The position numbers were made by a program, and so were the translations under genes. This document shows, in pieces, positions 10,627-46,786 of a stretch of 64,000 nucleotides of DNA. The DNA is taken from assembly GCF_011386835.1 (NCBI RefSeq), contig NC_088800.1, positions 19,344,001 through 19,408,000 of the forward strand. Reading direction: 5' to 3'. A model generated the notes under the pieces. That model saw only the letters and a list, made by a program, of their open reading frames with translations, was not told the DNA's origin and searched no databases. The DNA is from Chrysemys picta bellii (taxonomy: Eukaryota). How positions within the stretch are numbered: position 1 is the first letter of the stretch; the number at the start of each line of letters is the position of its first letter.

Positions 10627-12644
10627 TTTATTGAACAATTACAGTATTTATGATCCAAAAACCAAGTTGGAAAAACTTAGAATGACTGATCTTGTGTTAG
10701 AATTACAGATTAGATACTCATGCTAGTCTATAGTTTGCTATTTAAAAACAGGGCATGTATTCTAATCAGATATACACATGCCAAAAAGAGTAATTAATCT
10801 TTGCTTTGTGTAGTTACTGCACAGTCACTTTAGAAAATTACAGTAAAAATAGTGTTCAATTCATTTGAAAGAAGACTCTCTACTGAGTGTACAGAGACAC
10901 AGAACAGCCCCTCATCTTAGGCCTTCACATCAGCTCTTATAGCAATATGTATACGCTGACACATTTCAGTCACAGAAGACCTCTAATTTATAGGAGAGTC
11001 GCATGACAGTGGTCAGATCACACTGTGTTGAAAGATATTTTAAAGACAAACCTGAAGGCCTGATCCTACTCCTGTTGAAATAAATGAAAGTTCCACTGAC
11101 TTACCAGGTGTCTTGTCAATGCTCTAAAGTTGGCAATAATTCAAGTTCATGAACTTAACTTGCTTCCTTGATTTCACTTATGACCACTTTAAATTGCTGC
11201 ATCCATACCAACTGCACAGTTTGAGAGGACAATTGTCTATTACCCAAGATAAAAAAGGGTATGGATGCACTTGTGACAGTGATTATGGACCTAGTCACTT
11301 CAAGGGATACTTAAACTTGTTGCTTCTGGCCTTCATGACTATTTAACAAAAGCAACATCTCAAAATGCCAGCACTGTACATATATCAAATATACCCAGAA
11401 TACAATTTAGCATTTAAGTGTCAAATGTGGTAGGTTTCGAGAAGTGATTAAGACTAGTCTACCTATTTTCTCTTTAATTTAGGCCATTACATCATCTACT
11501 TCAGTTTAAAAAAAAAATTTAAGAACTTCCAATGCATTTAAAAAACAAAGTAATCAGAGACTGGTTTTATTTTTTTAAGTGTCTGGAAGACAGGCTGTCA
11601 CTTGTTAGATAGATCTGGCATCACTACCATGGGGTGGGGGGGCAAAAATAATAATAAATAATAAAAATCAGCTACCAAAAAAAACCCACCCAACCTCCAC
11701 CAGTGCTACATGACTGCTTGATACCTAGAATGTCATCTCTAGATGAGAGTTTAAAATTCAATTGGTACTTAAATTTATGCAGCAGCAATTTACATTAAGT
11801 CTAAAGAAAGTCCTGAGCATTCTGTTGAGACCCATCCAGCCTCTTTCAGAGACTTTGGCACAGTGAAGATCTGTTGCAGTTATTATAGTAGTGGGAGAGA
11901 ACATGCTAGGCACTTACAGCTCAGTGATGGAAAAAACTGACCTGTGACTGGAAAAACTATTTTTCCAGTCACCTGGACCTACTTTAGGGTGGAGAACCTA
12001 GTTATTTTGTGAGAGTATCCGTCACAAAAGCCTTTGGGTTGTGGAGACTTCACTGGGCTTTAAGACAAAAAAAAGTAAGATCTAATTTATAAAGTTAAAA
12101 GCAATACTAGTGTACAGTTCCAGCAAAGAATTAATTAGCATGTGGGCATCCAACCACTGGATTCAGAGAAATGTTCGTTACTATGAAATACTCCATTCCC
12201 CAGTAGAATATCTTTTACTATTAGTGTAAACAAGTGAGGTCTTCCAGTAACATCAGTTTCCAGAATTTCTGTGAAAAGAAGAAAGTCAAGACTGTTTTTA
12301 TGCAAGTGGTTTTAGACTAGTAACAATGCCTACCAAAAAAAGGCCATACAATCTAACACTAAGTTCTTTGGGATAGGGCTGGGGGTCTTCCCATTTGGAA
12401 GGGGACCTAGGATGGTGTTCTAATTGGTACTGCACCATCACCATACCAGGTTGACAATTATAATAGCCGCCATACATTTGCATACAAGCCATTCTACAAA
12501 GAATGCTGAAACCTGAATTAAGCTTCATAATATGGTTGGAGTTTTCCCTACCAGTTGCTAGCTCATAACTTTTATTGATCTTTAGGAAGCCCTCAGAGAG
12601 CAGAACATACCAAAAATTGGTGCATCAGTCTCCTTTCGAGTTTT
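10627..12644 (-). other. Putative 3' UTR of the CDC42SE-like gene with three AATAAA signals
   Basis: AT-rich stretch downstream of the stop; + strand TTTATT (AATAAA on -) at 12571-12576, about 11566-11571 and 10627-10632. Confidence 0.5.
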
Positions 12645-12719
12645 CTATAGCTGTGCACTTGCAGGAGGGCCATTTGTGTAGCCACCTTTTGACTTCATAT
12701 GGTCCTGAATTGACCCAGC
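12645..12719 (-). CDS. CDC42SE2-like: CDC42SE-like last coding exon
   Basis: ttcttctctag| acceptor; [24 protein letters not shown] followed by TAG ending at 12645. Confidence 0.9.
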   Translation of the reverse strand, partial: AGSIQDHMKSKGGYTNGPPASAQL

Positions 12720-15700
12720 CTAGAGAAGAATACAGTAGGTTAGTAGATGCCCTTTATTTGTCAAAGCATTAAGCCTTACATTGGAAAGGAAGAGAAAGTA
12801 CTTCAAACATTAATCCTAATGGGCAAGACATACTTATCCACATATGGAGGGATGTCAATACTCAGGGTATCAGTGACAAAACTGAGATTAGCAACATGCT
12901 GCTCTTCTAAATGGGTGTGCAAGTCCTGGTACTTCAGTGGAGTGACAGAAGAATGAGGCCTCATGAGTACCGACATACTCCATTCCCCCACACCACCACC
13001 ACTGACTGTATATGCCAGGACTGCAGTGTGTCAGATGAGAAAGTGCTATGAGCTAGTGTCAAGTTAAATGACCTAAAATAAATCTATTCTGGGTGTGTAG
13101 GATGTAGAAGACTATGGTCTGTCCTGACACTATTCTGCTGCATTCATTCTCTGTACACTGGCAAGTGATGCTCACAACTTTAAACATTTAGTTTTAGCAG
13201 TTAGGCATGTCTCACACATTTCTGCTCATCTTGAGGAGTACATACTTACAGATGTAAAACCACTATTCATATCTCTTGTTCCAACATGGGCAGTATGGAC
13301 AAAGTTCATTGGTTTTCCAATCATATTTCGGTCTAGTCTCCGACGTCTCTTCTTTAAGAGAAGAGGGAAAAAAATTATATGTGCTTAAGCAGAAAATCCT
13401 TTACATAAGACAGTCAAGGTTGTGTCTGGGAATTATCGCCCAGTTGATAAGAACCTTCTAGTGACTCCTAGTGGAAACAGAACCAACATATTAACACATT
13501 TCAGTGTTGTCTTTTTAAAAAGAGCAGAATGTACTAAGGTTTTTTGTTGACATATGAATCGGTTTGTCAGCAGAAGATTTGAAGCAAGCACTAAAAAGCT
13601 GTTTTCTAGCACTAAAGGAACAGACTTTTAGGCTTTCACTCAACATAACTAAGGTACCTATAAAAAAAGGCACTTACACATGTGGTTTAGACTAGACACT
13701 GCCTCTGCCATTTCCACTTGCTTTTCATCTGATAACACAAGTTAAGAGCACTAGAGGACTCAATGTGACATTTACTCCATCAGCAGGACTGCTATAGAGA
13801 AGTTACATAACTTTAAACTCTTACTATAGTCAGATGAGCCAGTTGCAAGACTGGGGCCTCTTTCTATGGAACTTTGCACCCTCAAAGAGCCTCATTGTAG
13901 TCAAGAGAGGTTCCATCTTCGGATTAGTTTCCAGGATGGGGGTCTGAAGATTGCACGTTTACTTTAATTTAAGAGAGTCTAAATAGGAGTTGTTTTGCAC
14001 CTTTGACTATGTCTAACTGACCATTTGCAGGTGCATTTTTGCGAGTCTAGGCCTATTGGGTTAGAAATCTATGCACCACAATGCTAAATGCAATAAGGGA
14101 CATTTATGCATTTTTTTAAGCTAGCTTCTCAGCCAGTCCTTGAACAATGAAGTCAAGGTTCCAGGAGTCAGATTTAGTTAAACCCAGTTTCTCTCCTGTC
14201 TTGCATTGGGATAACTTAAGAAAGCTTAATATTGCTGGTAGGGTTGCCAACTTTTGTTAGACAAATTCCTAGAGATTGCCTCATGTGACGATCTTTAATT
14301 AAAGATTAATCTTTAATTCCTGGAGACTCCTAGGGTAGGAAACCTTAATTGCTGGTGGAACAATAATCAACTGAGTGACTGTTGCAGTGTGACCAGCAGC
14401 ACACTATTTGCATGCAGCATCTTTCCAGAGATTTTTCTCTGTCCCAAGAAAATGGGGTTACTGAGATCAGAGGACCCTATTACAAGTATTTTTTAGAAGT
14501 TTGTTTTTGTTTAAAAAATATGCACTACCTCTGGGGATTAGAAAATCCTTCCTGGGGGGTACTGAGGAGTTCCAAAAGAGAATCCTCTTCAGTTCCTTTG
14601 CCAGAAGGCTATGGGATCTGCATGCTGAGTGTAGAGCAAGATGAGAGAAGTTATTTCTATCAGGGAAGCAGAGTACATAAATAGGCATTCCCAACTATTA
14701 CTGCTGCTGCTTTGGACAGACCACTCCCTACCTAATCAAATGCAACTGAACTGGGAGCAGAGATACCCAGTAAGCCTTTATGTTAGTTTTAAAAAGCACT
14801 TTTGAGGAAGAGAGAGTCAAGTGTCCACATGGCAGCATGTAGGGGAAGAGCAGGACAGTCAAAAATAAATAAAGGAGGGCAAGTATTCATTTTGCTTCTA
14901 CCACAGTATCTCCTGTAGTGTTATATATTCCCAGGTATATATTACAGTAGCAAGACTTACCTTCCTGGTATACAAGATACCCAAGGCCTGCCAGAATGAT
15001 GTCCTATGGGAATTCTCCAGTATCAAGTTAGTTATAAGACCAGAGAGTTTCCTTGTGCCACACAAGTACATTAGCCAGTGTATGAGTTGGTGTGACAGAT
15101 GCAGGTTGGTCTGTAATGATTTATAACCAATGCATGTTGATGTGGTTATTGGGATGTTTTCTATGTAGCCATATTGGTTTAAGCCACAAAGTAGTATATT
15201 AACCCTTCACGTCAGGATATGTGATTTGCTACCACAATTTACTTTCCATTTATATGCATCACAAAGCCAGTTTGCTTGTCTCTAGTCAATAGTGGTCTAG
15301 GACCAAGTCAAGACTAAGGAGCATTTGCAGAGTCCTTAGGGTAATGGTCAAAGAAAGGGTACTTTCAGAAGCACTAAATATATCGCAGCCTCCCTTCTTT
15401 GAAGTCTGCAGGTAGAGGCTAAGGGTCGCTTGCGTACTTCTACTACTGAAAAGTTCAGCCCTAGAGACAGTTGTTTAAATGTTCTTCAGTGAGAACCAAG
15501 AAAGATGTTGACCTTTTCAAATATTACAACAAATATTACATTCCAGAGGCTGTAGCCACACCTCAAAGGCAGTTTGGTTTTAGAGTAAAATGCAGTGCAG
15601 ATACATTATGAATTATTGGTACACTCCAATATTTGAAGTGCTGTTCTATTCGGGAGACCCTAAATTGCATCTTTTAACTTAGATCTAGTTCTTGATTATT

Positions 15701-17053: not shown

Positions 17054-18647
17054 TGTGTCTTTCAGTAGCTTCCCTACACAAGGTGGTTATGAAATCTTGG
17101 TAGCTTGTTGATCTTGCCACATTAAAGGGAACACTGAAACCAGGAGGCCACTTCTACACAAAAACCAGTTCCTAAAATGGAGTTTTAAAGGAATTACTTT
17201 AGTAGATACCCAGAAGGCAGCCAAGTCAGATGAACATCTGGGGATTACATGTTTAACAGAATTTTTAACAAGTATGTTTATTTTTACTGATATATGCAAG
17301 AAGTGCCAGAATTCTGTTAAATAGCAGTTACTGAGCAATAAAGGCTTCAGTAGGCTTAGAACAAAAACAGAGATTGTAAGAAGAAATAGTTCTAAACATA
17401 GTGCCTCTAAAAGAGTGTTAGAATAGTTTTCATAGAAAGGAACAAAACAGATTAGATACTTGGAAACCCAAACCTCTTCAGAAGATAATATAGGTATGAT
17501 ACAAGAAAGAGATCCCTTTCTTACCTTTCACAATAAGATAGTTACAGAAACTTCAAGTCTCAGAGAAACTTCTGATTCTAGTCCTAGATGGGAAGAATAG
17601 ATTACACCCTTTATAACTGCAATGAAAAGCTTTTTATGACCGAGGGGAAAAAAAAGTCAGCAAGTCACCATTAGTTTTATATACTCACTAGAGTATATAA
17701 GAACATGAACGAAAAACAATACTAAACTAGGATCATAGACAAGAAGTTAACTAAAAATAGCCCTTAAAGCCACAGCATAGTCTGCCTTTTATTTACTCCC
17801 ACATTATGCTTGCTTATTATAAACCCATCCCTCTTCCAAACAACTTTACAGAGAGCCATAGAATAACATAATCCACACAGTAGCACCTGTATCTTGGTCA
17901 CCTTGATAACAAAAATATCACAGCTACTTTTTAATGTACAAAAAAAGTAGAGTAAACAGACGCTCACAAGCAACTTCATTCATTCCAAACCAACCCAACA
18001 GCCTTCATCAGGAAACAGAGTAACAATAATCAGTCACAAGCATTCTTTATATAGTGCCACAATTACCCAATTATCACATTTGTCTTCCTCACCTTTGCCT
18101 GTGTTACTCCTCCCACTTTATCCCTTTCCTCTTACACTTCTGATTTTTTTTCTTTTTGAATGTTCTGTCATTCATTTTTCACAGTATCTATCTTATTTGC
18201 CGATTAGTTTTCAGTGTTCTATATGGTATGTTATTATAGAATGCAAAGCCTTAACTTTATCTTTGGTGCTTTGAATACTATTTATCTGTCTTAATTATCA
18301 TTTCCCACCTCATTTCATATACTCACAAAGGATCAAATGCTCAAAAACAGTTAGGCCCCTAAATGCCATTGATTTCACTAGATGTTAGCAGCCTAGCTCA
18401 TGAGCATCCACCCTAAGGTCCTTACCATTATACCCCAATGCACAGCGGAGGGACTGTGGACCGTGCAGGTGTCTGGATGCTGGCCTTTTATAAGGCGATG
18501 AAGAAGTCTATGGCCCAAGTGCTGTACTGAGCTCTGTGACTGCAGATCCCTGCATCTCTGCTGAGTCCCATTGCAGTCATCTGCAGAATTGGGGCCTAAA
18601 ATAGGAGCAGGCCAAAAAGGGGCCTCAGAACTGATATTTATAGGGAT

Positions 18648-22380: not shown

Positions 22381-25300
22381 GTGAGAGCCGGGGGATGGGG
22401 GAGTTCGGGGGTGTGTAGGGAAATCGCTGGGTGGGTGGCCGGGAGGGGGCTGCGGGAGGGAACGCTCATGGGGAGCCTCCTGGTGACGCCTTCCTCCCGC
22501 CTGTGGTCTGCTGCAGCTGCCCCAGTGAGGTGGCGAGGTCAGCGCACGGGGCTGGGGTTGGTGGTGCCCGTGGCCTGCAGAGCCCAGCGCCGTCTAACGG
22601 TCCCTGTCCTGCCCTAGGGTCACCAATGGCGGCAAGACCACGCTGACTCACAAGCTCATGCAGGCCCTGCCCAACTGCAGCGTGGTGCATCAGGATGACT
22701 TCTTCAAGGTGAGTGGCCTGTGCGGGAACCTGTGCATGAGGTGACCCAGGACTCCTGGGTGCCCCGCTCCGCTTCCCGCTCATGGCCAAAGTTGCTTGTC
22801 ACTGGCGCACCCTGTGCTGTTGGCAGAGGGTGACTGGGCTGGGGCCAGCTGTGTGGCTGGTGGATAAGCTCCTGGGCAGTGTCCTGATGACTTTCCACTT
22901 TCCTGGAGCACTCCGCGTTAGTGGGAAGATAAAGGAGCCAACTGCTTTATCACAGTCTTCTTACTGCTTCTTATCTTGCCACAAACGAACCCTGTGGTGG
23001 GTCAAGGCACTCACTGTTAGGATATAGATATTCAGGCCTGTCTGTAAAGGTCTGTACTTTAAGAATTTAGGTGTATTCTGATCAGTTAGCTAGTTATAGA
23101 GGTATAAAAGCCTCAAAATCACTGTCTGCTGGTGTAAGGGCCTTCTCTTACTGTGACAGTCTGAGGCCTTGTTCTTAGGCTAAGCAGCAAAGGCAGCCAT
23201 AATCTGGGAAGTGTATGGTCACAGGCTCACATTCCAAACTAGTCACATTGAAATAAGATGCTTTTGGGCTGTTAAGAATAACAGGACAGGATTGTATTCC
23301 TATCACCTCCAGGGAAAGGGAAAAGCCTAGAAGATGTAAAAGGAAACTTAGTTTGATAGCATCCTGTCTGGCAAGAACTCACTTATCAATAACTGGGATG
23401 TGAAATCCTCATTTCTGTATTGTTCTATCTCTGTAGTCTCCACTTCCCTATTGTTTGTCTGTATGATCTCTGTCTGGTTCTGTGATTGTTTCTGTCTGCT
23501 ATATAATTAATTTTGTTGGGTGTAAACCAATTAAGGTGGTGGGATATAATTGGTTAAAGAACCATGTTACAGTATGTTAGGATTGGTTAGTTAAATTTCA
23601 GTAAAATGATTGGTTAAGGTATAGCTAAGCAGAACTCAAGTTTTACTATATAGTCTACTGTCAATCAGAAAGTAAGGGGGGGATGGGGGAATTGGAATCA
23701 TGTTTCGCTAAGGGAGGGGGGAATGGGAACAGGGACATAGGCAAGGCTCTGTGGTGTCAGAGCTGGGAAGGGGGACACTGAGGAAGGAAACTCGAATCAT
23801 GCTCGCTGGAAGTTCACCCCAATAAACATCAAATTGTTTGCACCTTTGGACTTTGGGTATTGTTGCTCTCTGTTCATGCAAGAAGGACCAGGGAAGTGAG
23901 AAGGTGAAGGAATAAGCCCCCTAACACTCTTATGCAAAGGGATGTTTTCCAGTGAAGTTTAGGTCTTTAATCTGGCTTTAAAATGAATGTTGAGCTTTGC
24001 AGTAGCCGGTCAGACTAAAGCTGTTCTCTTTATCACTGTTTCAGCCCCAGGATGACATAGAAGTTGAAGATGGATTTAAACAGTATGATGGTAAGGCCCT
24101 GCTTATTGAACCATCCATGTAGAAATTGTAACTCTTAAAAGGATATCTGTTCTCTTTCCTATTCATGTTGCTTTCCTTCTGGTGACTCTTCTGATAGTCA
24201 TAGCACTTAATTACTTTTCTGGGCTTTTGTCTTAGTTATTAGTGCCTTGGATATGGAAGCTATGATGAGTACCATCAATGCTTGGATGAAAAACCCAATT
24301 AAGTTTGAACGCTCACATGGCATCAATAACACCTTGGATGCCAAAATATTACAGTATTCAGGAGAGAGAGATGAAACAATCCATATTCTTATTGTAGAAG
24401 GCTTTCTTCTTTACACTTACAGGTAACTAAAGACTTACAATATGTCTGATAACTAGTAATTCTGGCTTGATATGTATTTTGTTTTCTATTAGGTAAAGTT
24501 GCAGGAAGTCAAACTGATTCTTAAAACTAGAGTTGGGCAAATAACTGATTTTTCTGTTTGCTGGTAATTCTGAAAAATACAAAATTGGTTTGAAACAAAT
24601 CTAAAAATTGCAAAATAGTTGGCAAATTTTAAAAAATCCATATTGGGTCAAACAGAACATCCTATTTGTCCCAGAACATATTGTTTCGGGCATTTTTAAA
24701 GGGCTAGATTCATGAAATGGGCCAGGAGGAGGTGGATCCCCCTTGTAAACTTTGGTCAAGTGATTAGGGAACCCCCTGGGATGTGGGAGGCAAGGTTCAA
24801 TTCTCCCCTCTACCTGATGTGGAGAAGGGATTTGAACATTGGTCTCCCACATTGCAGGAGAGTTCCTGACCCTCAGGCTATAGGATATGCAGGTGGCAGG
24901 TTTCTCAGTCTCTCCTGTTGAAACTGTTCCACTTCCTGTAAATGGTCATTGGAGCAGGGTCTTGAATGTTGGTGTCCCACAACCACCAAACTATAGGGTA
25001 ATTCTCACTTTCCCTACCTCAATGACTAATTTATTGTCATTATGAATACATTAATCGTAACCACTAAGCTAAAGGTATTGAACATACCTACCTCTTACAC
25101 AGTGTTCTTCATCAGCTTCTAATTCTCGTCACGATGCCTGTGAGCTAGGGAAGTATTAGTTCTATTTTATAGATGGAACTGAGGCACAGAGAAGCTAAAT
25201 GACTTGCCACTTGGGTCTCTCAAGTCCTAGGCTAGTGCCCTTGCCACTGAACCACCCGGTCTTGCTCTGACCATTTTGTGAATTGCATCTAAGTCCTGGG

Positions 25301-27476
25301 ACGGAGGATTTTGGCCAAAACTCTTTGGCATATTATTGTTAAAGTTGCAAATAGCTTCAGGTTGACTGAAACTGCAGTTTTTATTAATAAACCACGTCTA
25401 GAAAAAATTCACTCAGTTCTAAGTACAATTTATATGCTTAACTTTTTAAAGCGGCACCTAAAATTATTGGAATTGTCATACCGTCATCAGACAGCCCATG
25501 CAACTGGGTATCCTGCTGTCAATTGCCAATCAGAAATCATAGGAAGGTGTAAAAATCTCCACTAATGCTCTTACTAATGTTGCACCTTTAGTTCTTATGC
25601 AGATCAAATAGAGTAGCTGTAAAATATACAAAAACTAGAGAATTTCTTTTTCAGACCATTGATTGAGATATTCAACCATCGGTACTTCCTTTCCATTCCA
25701 TATGAAGAATGCAAGAAAAGGAGGAGGTAGGCTTTGATGTTTTTTCTTAAATGAAGTAATCAGTAAGGTAATCTGGTAATTACTACATTTTATTTATAAA
25801 GCTTTATTTGGTTCAGGCAGCAGTAGAGGATGCTTGAGAGAGTCTTAGATTTACTGGGTTAGTCATTTAATTGCGTACTCCATGGTATCTGAGAAGTTCC
25901 TGCAAAGTTCTAGAAATATACTAGCTGGTATCAAAAGCCAATATATAACTGAAATGGGCCCCAAAGCTCAAAGGATGAGAGATGCAAAAGAACCTGTGAG
26001 GTCTGAATTGTTTGGGATATGGCTTTCCAGACAATCTCTTGACATTGTCTTCATTATTGAGTCTTCAGGATTTAAGAATCGCCTATATGAGAAGAGTTTT
26101 CTTTAATGGTAAAATTGCCAGTTAGTACTCCGCTATCTTTTCCCTTCACTCCTTTACGAGAAACTAAGCTTTTGGGCCTTGTTTACATGTGGGATTTGTC
26201 CAGATTTCAGCCACTGGTATGGCAGTATTGGTGCAAAACTCCTGTAAGAAGGTAAAGCACTCTTTGCACTAGTGGAGCTTACCCCTTCCTGAAAGCAGGT
26301 TATGCTCCACTGGTGAAAACAGCTATTTTTGGCCTACCTTTGCTAGGGACTAGCCACTTTTGAAGTTCAAAACATGAAAGTTTCTCTTCTGTTTCATGCC
26401 ATAATTTAATGCATGATGTCCAAAAGCTACAGCAATTCTTGATATGAACAAATATCGTGTAAGTAAGGTCAGTTGATATAGAGTTCTGAGAATCTTAATC
26501 TGTCATTTCTGCAACCTGCCATACCTGTCATATCACACTTCATTATTCTGTTTTGTCTTCAATCTTTTTTGCAGCCGATACATAACATATCAACTTTGAC
26601 AAAAATTCAGAGAATTTACATCAAGATAACTAGTTTTGATTTGGTGGTGGGTAAAGAGATTGCACTGTATCTAGACTTCTTACCTTGTAACAAGAAATAC
26701 TTATGTACCACTGTCTTTATAATCTCTAGTTCAAGGAACTACACTGTACCAGATCCTCCTGGATTATTTGATGGCCATGTCTGGCCCATGTATGTTAAAC
26801 ATAAGAAAATAATGGAGGATTTCGAAGTGGATGTGGGTAAGTATATTGGATGGTGGAAGCTCAAGACTAGTGTATAGGGAAGTTTGTTTCTACTGTCTGC
26901 TCTGGGAGAGGGGGTACAATTTAAATAACTTAATTCAGTGAGTAGATTTGAACCAGTGCTACTTGTGATGTATGTAAGGCAGTTAAACTTCTTTGGGATT
27001 GGTCTAGTTCCTGGCCTATGTTTTAAAAAAAAAAAAAAAACTAGAGATTTGATAGGATTGTAATTCTAGGATGTTATCAGGATGTTTTTGTCTTCATTCA
27101 GAAATGTCTCAATTGTAACTTTTAAAAATATTTTTAAGTTCAATTGGATGGAACAAAATCAAAGGAGGAGCTGTTTAATGAAGTTTATGAACAGATCCAG
27201 AACAAGATTGAGAAACTGCTGCTTATGCAGGTAAAAAACAAACATGAAGCGTACCTCACTGCAATGGCAAACTGGCTTAATGTTTCTAAAATGAACAAGA
27301 GTAACTTTTTAAATACTTCTTTCAGAAACTCAGTGATTGCTAGTTGTACTCAGTAGAAGGGGGACTACTAGTGTTTTCAGACAGGAAAACAAAGCTGTTA
27401 ATTGTGTACACTATTGTAAGTGAGCCTCTTATGTATAATGTCAAACACTGAAATTTTCTTCGTTTTACAGAGATAG
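22355..27476 (+). CDS. NMRK2-like: Nicotinamide riboside kinase, NMRK2/MIBP-like, 208 aa, 8 coding exons (whole CDS span)
   Basis: Exons 22355-22380, 22618-22708, 24045-24090, 24236-24422, 25655-25726, 26730-26836, 27139-27230 and 27471-27476 sum to 627 nt with consistent phases. Motifs: P-loop [65 protein letters not shown]. Confidence 0.95.
22618..22708 (+). CDS. NMRK2-like: NMRK-like coding exon 2 (VTNGGKTT...HQDDFFK)
   Basis: Branch-point-like ctaac, then gccctag| acceptor; aag|gtgagt donor; 91 nt. Confidence 0.95.
23015..23926 (+). mobile_element. Solo LTR (912 bp) in NMRK-like intron 2
   Basis: TGTTAGG...CCTAACA inverted termini (TG..CA); several ATTGG boxes; TATATA at about 23647; AATAAA at 23821. 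TSD only partly matching (ctcac/ctctt). Confidence 0.8.
24045..24090 (+). CDS. NMRK2-like: NMRK-like coding exon 3 ([15 protein letters not shown])
   Basis: tgtttcag| acceptor; atg|gtaagg donor; 46 nt. Confidence 0.92.
24236..24422 (+). CDS. NMRK2-like: NMRK-like coding exon 4 (LDMEAMM...EGFLLYTY)
   Basis: ttgtcttag| acceptor; cag|gtaact donor; 187 nt in phase. Confidence 0.95.
24530..25010. mobile_element. Composite repeat with tRNA-like internal units
   Basis: Degenerate units such as ggcaaggttcaattctccc and gatttgaacattggtctccc; a related element lies at 59690-60230. Confidence 0.4.
25120..25255 (-). mobile_element. MIR/CORE-like SINE remnant
   Basis: ttttatagatggaactgaggcacagagaagctaaatgacttgcc core motif. 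Confidence 0.55.
25655..25726 (+). CDS. NMRK2-like: NMRK-like coding exon 5 ([23 protein letters not shown])
   Basis: ctttttcag| acceptor; gag|gtaggc donor; 72 nt. Confidence 0.95.
26730..26836 (+). CDS. NMRK2-like: NMRK-like coding exon 6 ([21 protein letters not shown]...)
   Basis: ctctag| acceptor; gtgg|gtaagt donor; 107 nt. Confidence 0.95.
27139..27230 (+). CDS. NMRK2-like: NMRK-like coding exon 7 ([12 protein letters not shown]...LLLMQ)
   Basis: tttttaag| acceptor; cag|gtaaaa donor; 92 nt. Confidence 0.9.
27471..27476 (+). CDS. NMRK2-like: NMRK-like terminal coding exon (R-stop)
   Basis: Strong acceptor ttttcttcgttttacag| followed by AGA TAG. Confidence 0.6.
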   Translation, partial: R

Positions 27477-30866: not shown

Positions 30867-31966
30867 ATTGTTCTTACATGGTTCCCCTAAGGACACCTAT
30901 GGGGCAGATCAGTGAGAGGGAGAGAGATTGATTCCTTCCTTCCTGCTTCAAAACCTACTGTGTTGGGTGGAGAAAAAGCAGCAACAGAGCCCCTGGCATG
31001 TATGTAGGGGGCAGGGGGGAATGGAGGAATGCAAGAAGCTCCTGCTTTGTGCAGTAAGTTTGACCTATCGACAGAACAGCATGCCCTAGTTACATGTACT
31101 TAAATTAAGGGAAGGTAACCATTTTAGTACTACCCAAACCATGAATGCCATGAGCAAACTAATGAATAAAGGAAGTCTCATCTATCAGTATTGCACACAC
31201 AGCTAAACTTCCCCTTTCCTGTCATTTTTTAAATCTGGCTCTAGACTTGTCTGAACTCCAGTCAGGATGAACAGAGGTAGAGAGGCCTGTTCTGTGATTA
31301 GTGCTGAAACTAGAACTTCCTCTAACTTGATAGGAACTAGATCATGCTGATGGGTGAATGACAAACTATTAAGTCACTTAACTAAAAATAGGTTATTTAT
31401 TCTATGCTAGATAGATATCCAGTGTTTTGAACTGAAACACCATTTAGATCACTAGTCTGCATATGCAGACTAACAGATGTCTTACAATAACAGAAGTTTA
31501 AATGATACATTTAATATTGGAAGGTATATAGCAGTTATTATGTAGCTCCTATTGTTTCCATGCTGACTAAGTGTACAAAGTAACAATCAGATGCAATAGG
31601 CTTTAGTAAGTAAACTTACATAGAGTGGGATCTTAAAGAGACACAATCAGTTATTTAGAGTTGGGTTCAGACTCACTCCTTTGTGTTACGATACTCTCGT
31701 ATGGTACCTATCATCAGTAGAAAACTATCATTTCCACCCCACTGTTCCACCATTAACCCCAATGACATTTTAGTAACAAGACATCTTACATTACTTTTAA
31801 ATTCAAGGTTTAATTTTCACCAGAAGCAAAACCTGGTCTTTGATAAATCAAGTACAATATCCACAGAAGTATGTGCTATTATTTTTGAGAGAACAGGTGT
31901 GTGTTTTTAAAAGTTGTTCCTTTTCTTAGACTTAGTTCTGGCCAGTAAGCAAAGTTGATTGGATCA

Positions 31967-45248
<13,282 letters not shown>

Positions 45249-46056
45249 TTATTGTTGGTTGGTAGTGGATTCTAGAGTTCACCATAATTGACTGTGTTGT
45301 TTTAAATATTATAAGCACCACCCAGAGCATGGGATAGGTGCTCACAGAATATATATTTTAATAACCAAATAAAAAACATACAAGCATTTTATTTTTTCTT
45401 ACGTGCTGAGACTGCTCAGGCTTCACAAACAATTACACCGGGAATTTCCGCTTTTATGCTGCTTTTGGGATGTGTGTGTTGCTATCAACTCTTGCAGGAG
45501 AAATGAAACACTCAGCTTGGGTCTTGGCGATGAAGAAAGCCGAGGGAATTCAGTGGAATGACAGCGTGGCCCTTATCTGTTTTAAGATCCTAAACCTATT
45601 ATGTATTTTAAAAAGTTTCAGTTCCCTGTCTACAATCACTTTTTAGCATCTAGGTCAACAAGTTATTGAGATGAATGTTACCAGATACAAAGTTCAAACC
45701 TGTGACCATCCACTCCTGAAATGACTAAAACAAATGTGAATCAGAATCATAAAAGACAGTGTTCCAGTCTAAAGATATGGCAAGTTATAGAGCATTACCA
45801 AGATTTATCTGATCTTTTATTGCAGTTAACCCAATATCAATATACATGACTTTAACCAAGAAAAAAAAAAGCCAACTATGAGAATTTTTCTCTATAAGTG
45901 CAACACCCTTTGATATTTTGCATCTAGTAAACAGATGGGGGGGGAACCCCTTTTAAATAGTTTAATCAATCATTTATAACCACAATTTACTTTTTTTTTT
46001 GCTCTGCATATTAGTAGGAAACATTTTGCTATTCTAAGCCATAAAGTTGGTGACAG

Positions 46057-46786
46057 CAGTGTTGCCAACTCTTACAATTTTAATCACGTCTCAATATTTA
46101 TTTATAAATATATCCCCAGCTCCTTATTTATTTAGCATGTGCACAGTTATCTAGCCAAGTGATGGCATCTTCAGTGGCGTGATGCAGTTCTTCTAGGCCA
46201 CCGCTGACTGGCTGCAGAGACCTTGCCCGGTCCGGAACCTGTTCAACCGGGACCACTGACAGGGCAGGTCAAAGTCAGGCAGGCAAACTGTGGGGTCGGT
46301 GACGAGGGACCAGTTGGGGATTATAACAGATATCCATTCCTTGCGCCAGAGTGTTTCCACCCTAACATATTGGAGTTCAACGATGCCTGTGACCCAAGGT
46401 AGCAGGACCCGTGATACCTTCACGAGCAGGCCAGTGTGCCATACGCCGCTGTTAGATCGATGAAAACAGCACCTGTTTTCAAGTTTCTCTGGAAGCCATT
46501 TTCAACAAATGTGGTCAGCACAAGTACTTGGTCAATGTGCAACGGCCTCAGCAAAAGCTCCTGAAGTCATGTCGTAAGATGAAAATCTCAGCATTCATTT
46601 TTAAAAAAAAGGGGGGGGGAGGGCTGGGGAGCAGGAGGAGTATGTTTCTGGCCACTCAGCGTTGCAGAGAAAAGCTTGAAAATACAAACCCCAAAGGCTC
46701 AAAACCCAGAAAGCAAATAGAAAAAAATATAATAAATGTTGGGTTAATATTTCATGACTTTCAAATGCTTGGAATTGGCAATACTG
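46057..46786. mobile_element. Non-autonomous DNA transposon interrupted by a LINE fragment
   Basis: TIRs cagtgttgccaa / ttggcaatactg; internal sequence related to 62275-62540. Confidence 0.55.
46124..46460 (-). mobile_element. Non-LTR retrotransposon 3' end (Ingi/Vingi- or RTEX-like)
   Basis: ORF text PDFDLPCQWSRLNRFRTGQGLC, then ELHHATEDAITWLDNCAHAK* and a (AAAT)n tail. Confidence 0.6.

What the first reader, a model, noticed from the sequence alone, without database searches (positions are those of the whole stretch)
12645..17073. Hidden micro-gene: a third CDC42 small-effector (SPEC) paralog missed by the ORF track
Seen in sequence: three small exons (54, 102 and 75 nt) with clean GT-AG sites splice in frame to a 76-aa protein with an intact CRIB motif, a polybasic patch and a KSKGGY tail. 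Established: human has CDC42SE1 (1q21.3, near SEMA6C, GABPB2 and BNIPL) and CDC42SE2 (5q31), and none at 15q21 where SQOR and SEMA6D lie. Inference: this is a separate whole-genome-duplication paralog ('CDC42SE3') lost in mammals. It is too diverged from CDC42SE2 (IGKPMNF vs [18 protein letters not shown] vs GSGDLFSGMNS) to be a recent copy, and it has introns, so it is not a retrocopy.
Basis: partly seen in the sequence, partly recalled or inferred. Interest (0 to 1): 0.85.

Follow-up and report, generated by a model that had tools for sequence, protein, structure and literature searches.

The report
Third CDC42 small-effector gene, already annotated
The three small exons are a real, spliced and highly expressed gene for a 76-residue CDC42-binding-type protein. 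It is an old third member of the SPEC family that mammals seem to lack, but public annotation already holds it as 'CDC42 small effector protein 2-B-like', so it is neither hidden nor new.

Summary
Observation confirmed. Minus-strand exons 17053-17000, 13351-13250 and 12719-12645 have GT-AG borders and give a 76-aa protein with an N-terminal Cys motif, a KRRRR patch and a CRIB motif (Pfam PBD 26.8 bits). Contigs from likely RNA runs of three organism labels carry both coding junctions exactly. They add a 5'UTR exon (about 17612-17525), extend the first coding exon to 17171, and show a 3'UTR intron (12610-12269).

The genome also has canonical CDC42SE2 (C6, near a HINT1-like gene) and CDC42SE1 (C20, near an MLLT11-like ORF). 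So this is a third locus, not a moved CDC42SE2.

It lies in a conserved block: SQOR, an NMRK-like gene, this gene, an SPPL2-type gene. The block is seen in whole or in part in ostrich, alligator, an amphisbaenian, a frog and a sturgeon. SEMA6D lies 1.6 Mb away. Turtle-ostrich dN/dS is 0.06. No mammalian protein of this type was found.

The gene is not new. The identical protein is RefSeq XP_053899117.1, 'CDC42 small effector protein 2-B-like', and orthologues carry inconsistent 2-A, 2-B and 2-C names.

The reading as an ancient paralogue lost in mammals is largely supported. An origin in the whole-genome duplications is likely but not proven, because the tree is weak. Interest is low to moderate.

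The parts
17525..17612 (-). Non-coding exon 1 (5'UTR). The 5' limit is only the end of two contigs, so the true start lies at or upstream of 17612. The promoter region is AT-rich with no CpG island (GC 0.345, CpG o/e 0.15).
   Evidence: An 86-nt loose end at 17173 in runs X1 and X3 maps uniquely to 17527-17556. The GTAAGA donor lies after 17525.
17000..17171 (-). Exon 2: rest of the 5'UTR, with one 11-codon uORF, and the first 18 codons (ATG at 17053-17051). It encodes [18 protein letters not shown], the N-terminal Cys motif (Cys7 and Cys11).
   Evidence: Contig pieces cover 17000-17173 and the joint 13351->17000. The acceptor TTTTAG precedes 17171. The translation is and the uORF.
13250..13351 (-). 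Exon 3, 34 codons: the polybasic KRRRR patch and the CRIB motif ([14 protein letters not shown]).
   Evidence: Pfam PBD matches residues 28-51. This is the only exact match in the genome.
12611..12719 (-). Exon 4: the last 24 codons plus the stop (CDS 12719-12645, TAG at 12647-12645), then 34 nt of 3'UTR up to a GTATGT donor.
   Evidence: Joints 12719->13250 and 12268->12611 are.
11400..12268 (-). Exon 5, 3'UTR. Coverage runs past the low end of the laid stretch, so the 3' end is not fixed. Candidate poly(A) signals lie at 11571, 11478, 10632 and 10327.
   Evidence: Contig pieces cover 11408-12268 in X1, X3 and X4.
22603..27233 (+). Neighbouring gene on the opposite strand: a nicotinamide-riboside-kinase-like (Pfam AAA_18) gene of about 205 aa. 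It starts in a G+C-rich stretch (GC 0.568, CpG o/e 0.48) at about 22-23 kb and is part of the conserved block.
   Evidence: tblastn of ostrich ORFs hits six exons. One exon gives a weak PDB match to NRK1, E 3.5e-4. Orthologous 203-208-aa AAA_18 genes lie beside the SPEC gene in ostrich, frog, alligator and Rhineura.
31962..53000 (-). SQOR, the upstream neighbour on the same strand. The first coding exon is at about 44.9-45.1 kb and the last exons at 33161-31962. A G+C-rich, CpG-island-like stretch (GC 0.609, CpG o/e 0.63) lies at about 52-54 kb. The 5' limit is approximate.
   Evidence: The ORF 44895-45239 matches human SQOR structures at E 1.5e-15. The 3' exons match the end of the ostrich 450-aa Pyr_redox_2 gene.

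Best explanation
This is a working protein-coding gene of five exons, three of them coding, for a 76-aa member of the SPEC (small protein effector of CDC42, CDC42SE) family. It is the turtle orthologue of what databases call 'CDC42 small effector protein 2-B-like', 2-B, 2-C or, wrongly, 2-A.

The likely mechanism, taken from SPEC1 and SPEC2, has three steps:
1. The N-terminal cysteines are lipid-modified.
2. The KRRRR patch binds acidic phosphoinositides, holding the peptide at the membrane.
3. The CRIB motif, with both histidines kept, binds GTP-loaded CDC42. That competes with or redirects other CDC42 effectors and so shapes actin.

In evolutionary terms it is a third paralogue, distinct from CDC42SE1 and CDC42SE2. 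It sits in a conserved SQOR / NMRK-like / SPEC / SPPL2-type block in the region matching human 15q21. It dates back at least to the ancestor of bony vertebrates, is kept under strong purifying selection, and is apparently absent from mammals. An origin in the two early vertebrate genome duplications is the most likely source.

Shown here: gene structure, splicing, expression, the three loci, microsynteny, constraint and distribution. Inferred: lipidation, lipid binding, CDC42 binding, the whole-genome-duplication origin, and true absence from mammalian genomes.
For: - Structure and translation.
- Exact spliced joints at high depth, in runs of three organism labels.
- CRIB over the Pfam cut-off. 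The family features that were tested on CDC42SE1 (two N-terminal Cys, basic region, CRIB, H38A loss of function) are described in PMC6406378. His37 and His40 are invariant in alignments A1 and A2.
- Three SPEC loci in the genome. C6 encodes the 84-aa CDC42SE2, identical in about 130 amniote taxa, 166 kb from the best HIT/HINT hit. C20 encodes the 78-aa CDC42SE1, 43 kb from an MLLT11-type ORF.
- All three genes share the 54-nt first coding exon and phase-0 introns.
- Microsynteny: ostrich has SQOR, AAA_18, SPEC, SPPL2. Frog has AAA_18, SPEC, SPPL2. Sturgeon has SPEC, SPPL2. Alligator has AAA_18, SPEC. Rhineura has AAA_18, SPEC, SPPL2. In this genome SPPL2-type exons lie at C10:19.304-19.319 Mb, just below the window, and SEMA6D at 20.99 Mb.
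- The 54/102/69-75-nt exon structure is conserved in ostrich, frog and sturgeon.
- dN/dS turtle versus ostrich is 0.064.
- Trees: tetrapod sequences of this type form a supported clade (95/86), separate from SE1 (99/97) and from the SE2 group. Holding all sequences of this type as one clade costs 0.8 lnL (p-AU 0.445). Joining the tetrapod ones to SE2 costs 23.9 lnL (p-AU 0.074).
- No mammalian protein of this type in three database searches.
Against: - The tree rests on 84 columns. It does not recover fish and tetrapod sequences of this type as one clade, and it does not formally reject a link to SE2 (p 0.074). Groups were named after a first look at the sequences.
- The Takifugu gene of this type lies among TERF, NIP7 and IRF genes, not beside SPPL2, so teleost orthology rests on sequence alone.
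- In turtles, birds and alligator the CC doublet of the family is WC, so the lipid anchor may differ.
- Absence from mammals was tested only on predicted proteins.
- CDC42 binding was not tested.
- The runs are labelled RNA only by the tool's guess. The exon-only depth and the GT-AG joints are what argue for RNA.
Confidence: 0.85

Rival explanations
1. It is an old paralogue that arose by a small-scale (segmental or single-gene) duplication of a CDC42SE2-like gene, before or near the origin of jawed vertebrates. On this reading it did not come from the whole-genome duplications, and its place in a 15q21-like region is coincidental.
For: The sequence is closer to SE2 (63% identity) than to SE1 (49%). 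The tree cannot place the node. The test that joins tetrapod sequences of this type to SE2 is not formally rejected (p-AU 0.074).
Against: Three paralogues each lie beside or near members of other gene families that also have one copy per region:
- SE1 is near class-6-type Sema hits on C20.
- SE2 is on C6, which also carries Sema hits.
- This gene is near SEMA6D and an SPPL2-type gene.
- A fourth, shark and ray type lies beside LSM7. In human, from memory, LSM7 neighbours SPPL2B at 19p13.3.
A fourfold pattern of this kind is what the genome duplications leave behind.
Confidence: 0.12
2. It is the CDC42SE2 orthologue moved to a new place, or a recent lineage-specific copy of it.
For: Database names call it '2-B-like', '2-A' or '2-like'.
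Against: A canonical 84-aa CDC42SE2 sits on C6 near a HINT1-like gene. Frogs, birds, alligator and fishes each have both types. Microsynteny is shared from sturgeon to turtle. The gene has introns at the family's positions, so it is not a retrocopy.
Confidence: 0.02
3. It is transcribed but no longer functional: a decaying copy or a non-coding transcript whose ORF is kept by chance.
For: Squamate orthologues have an eroded basic patch (KRHPR; a deletion in Naja) and long branches. Turtles and archosaurs have lost one Cys of the CC doublet.
Against: Turtle-ostrich dN/dS is 0.064 with dS near 1.4. There are 27 invariant columns across ten tetrapod and coelacanth sequences, including the whole CRIB core and SKGGY. 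The ORF is intact with the same length (74-76 aa) from fish to birds. Transcript depth is very high.
Confidence: 0.02

Closest known systems
CDC42SE2 (SPEC2), 84 aa, human 5q31.1
   Same: Same three-coding-exon structure with phase-0 introns. Shared EQPQP-KRRRR-[I/L][15 protein letters not shown] core and SKGGY motif. 63% identity to the turtle's own CDC42SE2.
   Different: N-terminus is [11 protein letters not shown] instead of MSEFWLCFNCC. It has [10 protein letters not shown] instead of QNQMQSKGGY and lacks the QMQLVDTKAG tail (76 versus 84 aa). It lies at a different locus: C10 beside SQOR and SPPL2, against C6 near HINT1. It evolves much faster: about 80% identity between turtle and bird, while CDC42SE2 is identical across amniotes.
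CDC42SE1 (SPEC1), 78-79 aa, human 1q21.3
   Same: Same family architecture and intron positions, with a CRIB motif and a basic patch. The rooted trees put this type nearer to SE1 than to SE2, with weak meaning.
   Different: 49% identity. SE1 has WHKLGCC, KKKRRR, HLTHIG and an RSKG...SSRVL tail. It lies on C20 beside an MLLT11-type ORF.
Frog 'CDC42 small effector protein 2-B' and '2-C-like' proteins, and the RefSeq '2-B-like' models of turtles and birds
   Same: These are the same gene. They are 74-76 aa with MTEF..., MKSKGGY and a short tail. The neighbours are the same where checked: AAA_18 and SPPL2 in the frog Spea. The exact turtle protein is XP_053899117.1.
   Different: Nothing biological differs, only the naming. 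The names imply a CDC42SE2 duplicate and are inconsistent: alligator '2-A', sturgeon '2-A-like', Takifugu '2'. That the Swiss-Prot Xenopus laevis 2-B and 2-C entries are the two subgenome copies of this gene is my inference from the names, not something I checked.
Shark and ray 86-aa 'CDC42 small effector protein 2-like' (Leucoraja, Pristiophorus, Mobula, Narcine)
   Same: A SPEC family member that is neither SE1 nor canonical SE2.
   Different: It keeps an SE2-like N-terminus and a long ...LIDTTAA tail and forms its own clade (100/98). In the skate it lies 9 kb from LSM7. It is a candidate fourth paralogue, not the orthologue of the turtle gene. The sawshark 75-aa '2-C-like' protein (P0186) is the better candidate for that.

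Membership tests
SPEC / CDC42SE family | CRIB motif (I-x-x-P-x-x-F-x-H-x-x-H-V-G) recognised as Pfam PBD | tested here: met
   [17 protein letters not shown] scores 26.8 bits against a cut-off of 21.3 over residues 28-51. Both His are invariant.
SPEC / CDC42SE family | Very small protein (about 75-85 aa) with a polybasic stretch directly before the CRIB motif | tested here: met
   76 aa with KRRRR at residues 19-23. The feature is described for CDC42SE1 in PMC6406378.
SPEC / CDC42SE family | Two conserved N-terminal cysteines (the CC doublet at positions 10-11) | tested here: inconclusive
   Turtle, bird and alligator proteins read CFNWC: Cys7 and Cys11 are kept and Cys10 is Trp. Frog, fish and squamate orthologues keep CC. 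Whether the remaining cysteines are lipid-modified cannot be told from sequence.
SPEC / CDC42SE family | Shared gene structure: first coding exon of 18 codons ending ...PQP, with phase-0 introns at the same two places | tested here: met
   The structure is the same in this gene, in the genome's CDC42SE2 and CDC42SE1, and in the ostrich, frog and sturgeon orthologues.
SPEC / CDC42SE family | Binds GTP-loaded CDC42 | not testable with these tools
   No CDC42 sequence could be supplied to the complex predictor under its rules, so no job was sent. A pull-down is needed.
CDC42SE2 orthologue group | 84-86 aa with MSEFWLCFNCC, QMQSKGGY and the ...QMQLVDTKAG tail, at the HINT1/LYRM7 locus | tested here: not met
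   The sequence differs at all three marks. The locus is C10 beside SQOR, while the genome's true CDC42SE2 is on C6 near a HINT1-like gene.
Paralogue from the vertebrate whole-genome duplications (ohnologue) | Present before the split of ray-finned and lobe-finned vertebrates, ideally in cartilaginous fishes | tested here: met
   The type occurs in sturgeon, bichir, gar, teleosts and coelacanth. Sturgeon shares the SPPL2 neighbour. The sawshark 75-aa protein is a candidate only, with no locus data.
Paralogue from the vertebrate whole-genome duplications (ohnologue) | The paralogues lie in regions that are themselves fourfold copies (SEMA6A-D, SPPL2A/B and so on) | tested here: inconclusive
   SEMA6D and SPPL2-type exons lie near this gene. 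Sema hits lie on C6 and C20 near SE2 and SE1 but were not typed. The skate fourth type lies beside LSM7. The human map positions come from memory. No genome-wide paralogon analysis was possible.
Paralogue from the vertebrate whole-genome duplications (ohnologue) | A gene tree with each paralogue group as a clade that branches before the jawed-vertebrate radiation | tested here: inconclusive
   SE1, tetrapod sequences of this type and the shark 86-aa type are each supported clades. SE2 is unresolved near the root. This type as one clade is not recovered but not rejected (p-AU 0.445).

The most novel reading that the evidence does not exclude
Jawed vertebrates began with four SPEC genes from the two genome duplications:
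- SE1, in the 1q21-type region.
- SE2, in the 5q31-type region.
- The present gene, SPPL2A-linked, in the 15q21-type region.
- An LSM7/SPPL2B-linked gene now kept only in sharks and rays.

The present gene is an unstudied CDC42 effector that most non-mammalian vertebrates keep and express strongly in some tissues, and that mammals lost. In turtles and archosaurs the replacement of one lipid-anchor cysteine by tryptophan would then point to a changed mode of membrane attachment.
Probability: 0.55. Interest if true: 0.4.

Novelty: already known. Interest (0 to 1): 0.25.

Why it matters
As a gene it adds nothing to the databases: the exact protein has a RefSeq accession. Three modest points remain.

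1. Naming. The '2-A', '2-B', '2-C' and '2-like' labels hide the fact that this is a separate, old paralogue with its own conserved locus. Comparative and expression studies in chicken, Xenopus or zebrafish may therefore be lumping it with CDC42SE2.

2. An untested effector. No paper was found on this gene. It is a CDC42 effector absent from mouse and human, so work on SPEC function in mammals misses a third of the family. It could be tested directly in chicken, frog or fish.

3. A clean small example of differential loss of duplicated genes, possibly together with its NMRK-like neighbour.

Tried and rejected
- First database search with the single 76-aa protein. It collected only 36 candidates and missed CDC42SE2 and SE1 altogether. 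It had to be repeated with alignments.
- Literature. Searches for CDC42SE3, cdc42se2l, cdc42se2-like, cdc42se2b and 'small effector protein 2-B' gave one paper, on a CDC42SE2-BRAF fusion tumour, which I did not open and which is probably irrelevant. The CDC42SE1/CDC42SE2/paralog search gave nothing on a third paralogue.
- The look-up of encoding contigs for the turtle protein itself found nothing on record.
- IRF (PF00605) and FNIP_C (PF14638) as markers of the CDC42SE2 neighbourhood. Neither gave a hit on C6; two contigs, C5 and C8, carry both FNIP and IRF hits. I read this as a break of the human 5q31 order in reptiles, not as evidence against CDC42SE2 identity. The HIT family then gave the expected neighbour.
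- Looking for the first SPPL2A exon inside the window with ostrich, frog and sturgeon ORFs: no hit. The gene's later exons lie 25-40 kb below the window.
- One PDB query failed on a stop codon and was redone with corrected coordinates.
- Earlier findings of this scan: nothing near the place or under the words tried.
- Complex prediction with CDC42 and structure prediction were not attempted.
- Rooting with unnamed invertebrate-looking sequences worked technically. It mostly pulled the slowly evolving SE2 to the root, so I give the rooted topology little weight.
Full report
**1. What is in the sequence**

On the minus strand, 17053-17000 (54 nt), 13351-13250 (102 nt) and 12719-12645 (75 nt including TAG) are bounded by GTAAGT donors and pyrimidine-rich AG acceptors. 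Joined, they give a 231-nt ORF of 76 aa, [18 protein letters not shown] / [34 protein letters not shown] / [24 protein letters not shown]. An in-frame stop lies 15 codons upstream of the ATG. Pfam recognises the CRIB/PBD domain above its curated cut-off, 26.8 against 21.3 bits.

**2. Is it expressed and spliced as predicted?**

Sixteen public runs hold all or part of the stretch. I laid four of them on window 11400-17300.

- In X1 and X3 (organism label A) and X4 (label C), contigs cover only the exonic parts. Depth is about 1000-1900 in X1 and X3 and about 80 in X4, against about 0-3 over introns.
- These contigs carry joints 13351->17000 (skips 3648, CT..AC on the plus strand, which is GT..AG on the minus strand) and 12719->13250 (skips 530).
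- X2 (label B) also shows the second joint.
- The tool marks 'RNA' as a guess, but exon-only depth with canonical joints is what a mature mRNA gives.

The same contigs refine the gene model in three ways.

- The ATG exon extends up to 17171.
- Eighty-six further letters map uniquely to 17527 upwards, after a GTAAGA donor. This is a non-coding first exon at about 17612-17525. Two contigs end at the same base, which hints at the transcript start but does not prove it.
- The last coding exon ends at 12611 at a GTATGT donor, 34 nt past the stop. A 342-nt 3'UTR intron follows, and then a final exon from 12268 down past 11400.

The 5'UTR has one short uORF, and the promoter region has no CpG island.

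Position 13315 reads C instead of T in X3, X2 and X4. This turns Lys31 into the Glu found in every other orthologue.

**3. Is it a separate locus?**

A six-frame search of the whole genome with exon 2 finds three loci: this one (C10), C6:81943110 and C20:17566329.

I assembled the other two genes.

- C6 encodes the 84-aa MSEFWLCFNCC...QMQLVDTKAG protein, which is the canonical CDC42SE2. The sequence is identical in about 130 amniote taxa and sits in one 90% cluster with fish and ray proteins.
- C20 encodes a 78-aa protein catalogued as CDC42SE1 of turtles.

All three genes have an 18-codon first coding exon and phase-0 introns at the same places.

Neighbours fit. The best HIT-family (HINT1-like) hit of the genome is 166 kb from CDC42SE2. 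A full-length 91-aa PF15017 ORF, which I take to be MLLT11 from memory of that family's content, is 43 kb from CDC42SE1. Both FNIP and IRF hits fall on other contigs, C5 and C8. I attribute this to the known difference between human 5q31 and the reptile and bird arrangement. That attribution rests on memory, not on a test.

**4. Surroundings**

- In the window, SQOR runs on the minus strand from a G+C-rich stretch at about 52-54 kb to about 31.9 kb.
- A nicotinamide-riboside-kinase-like (AAA_18) gene runs on the plus strand at 22.6-27.2 kb.
- The SPEC gene follows at 17.6-11.4 kb.
- SPPL2-type (Peptidase_A22B) exons lie on the minus strand 25-40 kb below the window start.
- SEMA6D is at C10:20.99 Mb. 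It scores 93 bits to the Sema6D structure against 55 bits to Sema6A.

The same order recurs elsewhere.

| Species | Genes seen beside the SPEC gene |
|---|---|
| Ostrich | SQOR-type, AAA_18 (opposite strand), SPEC, PA+Peptidase_A22B |
| Frog (Spea) | AAA_18, SPEC, SPPL2 |
| Alligator | AAA_18, SPEC |
| Amphisbaenian (Rhineura) | AAA_18, SPEC, SPPL2 |
| Two sturgeon assemblies | SPEC, SPPL2 |

The Takifugu gene lies among TERF, NIP7 and IRF genes instead. I read this as a teleost rearrangement.

**5. Already known?**

Yes.

- The exact 76-aa sequence is in the protein collection as XP_053899117.1, 'CDC42 small effector protein 2-B-like [Malaclemys terrapin pileata]'. So the window most likely comes from that assembly, and NCBI's annotation of it already has the gene.
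- Every turtle listed has the model.
- Birds, alligator ('2-A'), squamates, frogs ('2-B', '2-C-like'), a salamander, coelacanth, gar, sturgeon ('2-A-like'), bichir and teleosts ('2-like' or '2') have 74-77-aa proteins of the same type.
- I found no paper that treats it as a distinct gene.

**6. Evolution**

The type is marked by MTEF at the start, M-K-SKGGY and a short tail.

| Group or test | Result |
|---|---|
| Tetrapod sequences of this type | clade, 95/86 |
| SE1 | clade, 99/97 |
| 86-aa shark and ray type | clade, 100/98 |
| Canonical SE2 | evolves so slowly that it collapses near the root |
| Fish and tetrapod sequences of this type held as one clade | not recovered, but costs only 0.8 lnL (p-AU 0.445) |
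| Tetrapod sequences of this type forced together with SE2 | costs 23.9 lnL (p-AU 0.074) |

With 84 columns the tree alone decides little.

The sturgeon microsynteny is the stronger argument that the gene predates the split of ray-finned and lobe-finned vertebrates.

Turtle-ostrich dN/dS is 0.064, with dN 0.09 and dS about 1.4. Twenty-seven columns are invariant across ten tetrapod and coelacanth sequences.

No mammalian protein of this type appeared in any search. The mammalian hits are SE2, SE1 or clearly SE2-derived copies from a beaked whale and a tenrec. This is absence from annotation, not from genomes.

The regional picture fits the fourfold 1q21 / 5q / 15q / 19p paralogy of human chromosomes, where those map positions are from memory. 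SE1 and SE2 lie on contigs with Sema hits. This gene lies beside an SPPL2-type gene and near SEMA6D. The skate 86-aa gene lies 9 kb from LSM7. The fit suggests a genome-duplication origin but does not prove it.

**7. Mechanism**

For CDC42SE1 the literature describes three things (PMC6406378):
- two conserved N-terminal cysteines;
- a basic region that binds phosphoinositides;
- a CRIB domain needed for CDC42 binding, which the H38A change disables.

The turtle protein keeps the basic patch and the whole CRIB core, including both histidines. It most likely acts in the same way, as a small membrane-held binder of active CDC42 that modulates actin-related signalling.

One difference stands out. 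In turtles, birds and alligator the CC doublet is WC. Squamates keep CC but have an eroded basic patch. Binding and lipidation are inferred, not shown.

**8. Verdict**

The idea of a third, old paralogue missing from mammals is largely right. The claim that it is hidden or new is wrong. Novelty: already known as an annotated gene. The unpublished part is its status as a separate paralogue group with inconsistent names.

Noticed in passing
window 22603-27233 (+): A six-exon nicotinamide-riboside-kinase-like gene (Pfam AAA_18, about 205 aa) lies head-to-head with the SPEC gene. It is its constant neighbour in ostrich, alligator, Rhineura and frog. It matches human NRK1 only weakly (E 3.5e-4 on one exon), so it may be a further NMRK-family paralogue. 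Whether mammals have it was not tested.
   Followed up: partly
L021:10001-14070 (skate SPEC gene) and L021:23032-23151 (-) (LSM7 exon): The divergent 86-aa 'CDC42 small effector protein 2-like' gene of the little skate lies 9 kb from LSM7 (78 bits to human LSm7). Sharks and rays have this type as well as canonical SE2, and it forms its own clade (100/98). It is a candidate fourth SPEC paralogue, kept only in cartilaginous fishes.
   Followed up: partly
window 13315: T in the assembly and in run X1, but C in X3 (same organism label), X2 and X4. On the coding strand this is AAA (Lys31) against GAA (Glu31), inside the CRIB motif. Glu is the state in all other species, so the assembly carries a variant allele.
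   Followed up: partly
window 14291-14330: In all four runs many contigs end or begin here, with long loose ends that share a consensus (…CCTGGAGG…). This looks like a fragment of a dispersed repeat inside intron 1 of the SPEC gene that is transcribed from many genomic copies.
   Followed up: no
window 18648-18983 (-) and 35192-36215 (-): ORFs that look like the reverse-transcriptase and C-terminal parts of CR1-type LINE elements (for example ...YEERLRELDLFSLQKRR...). One lies between the SPEC gene and the NMRK-like gene, the other in a SQOR intron. The identification is by eye only.
   Followed up: no
G000 C8:95946274-96797244 and C5:64871083-81577563, against C6:81746113-81949456: FNIP-type and IRF-type exons, which could be the FNIP1 and IRF1 neighbours of human 5q31.1, sit only on contigs C5 and C8. 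HINT1-like and CDC42SE2 sit on C6. The human 5q31 gene order is therefore split in this genome right next to CDC42SE2.
   Followed up: partly
L016:10001-10989: In Takifugu the 76-aa gene of this type is flanked by TERF-type, NIP7 and IRF genes, not by SPPL2. Either the teleost locus was rearranged or the teleost gene is not the strict orthologue.
   Followed up: no
proteins P0316, P0317, P0319, P0177: Squamate orthologues (python, toad-headed agama, cobra, worm lizard) sit on long branches. They have a weakened basic patch (KRHPR; shortened in the cobra) and N in place of K before SKGGY. This suggests relaxed or changed constraint in squamates.
   Followed up: no
protein P0016: An 89-aa olive ridley turtle model of this gene departs from the other turtle proteins after ...GFTS, at the exon 3/4 border. 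It is probably a one-base shift of the acceptor in that annotation and not a real isoform.
   Followed up: no
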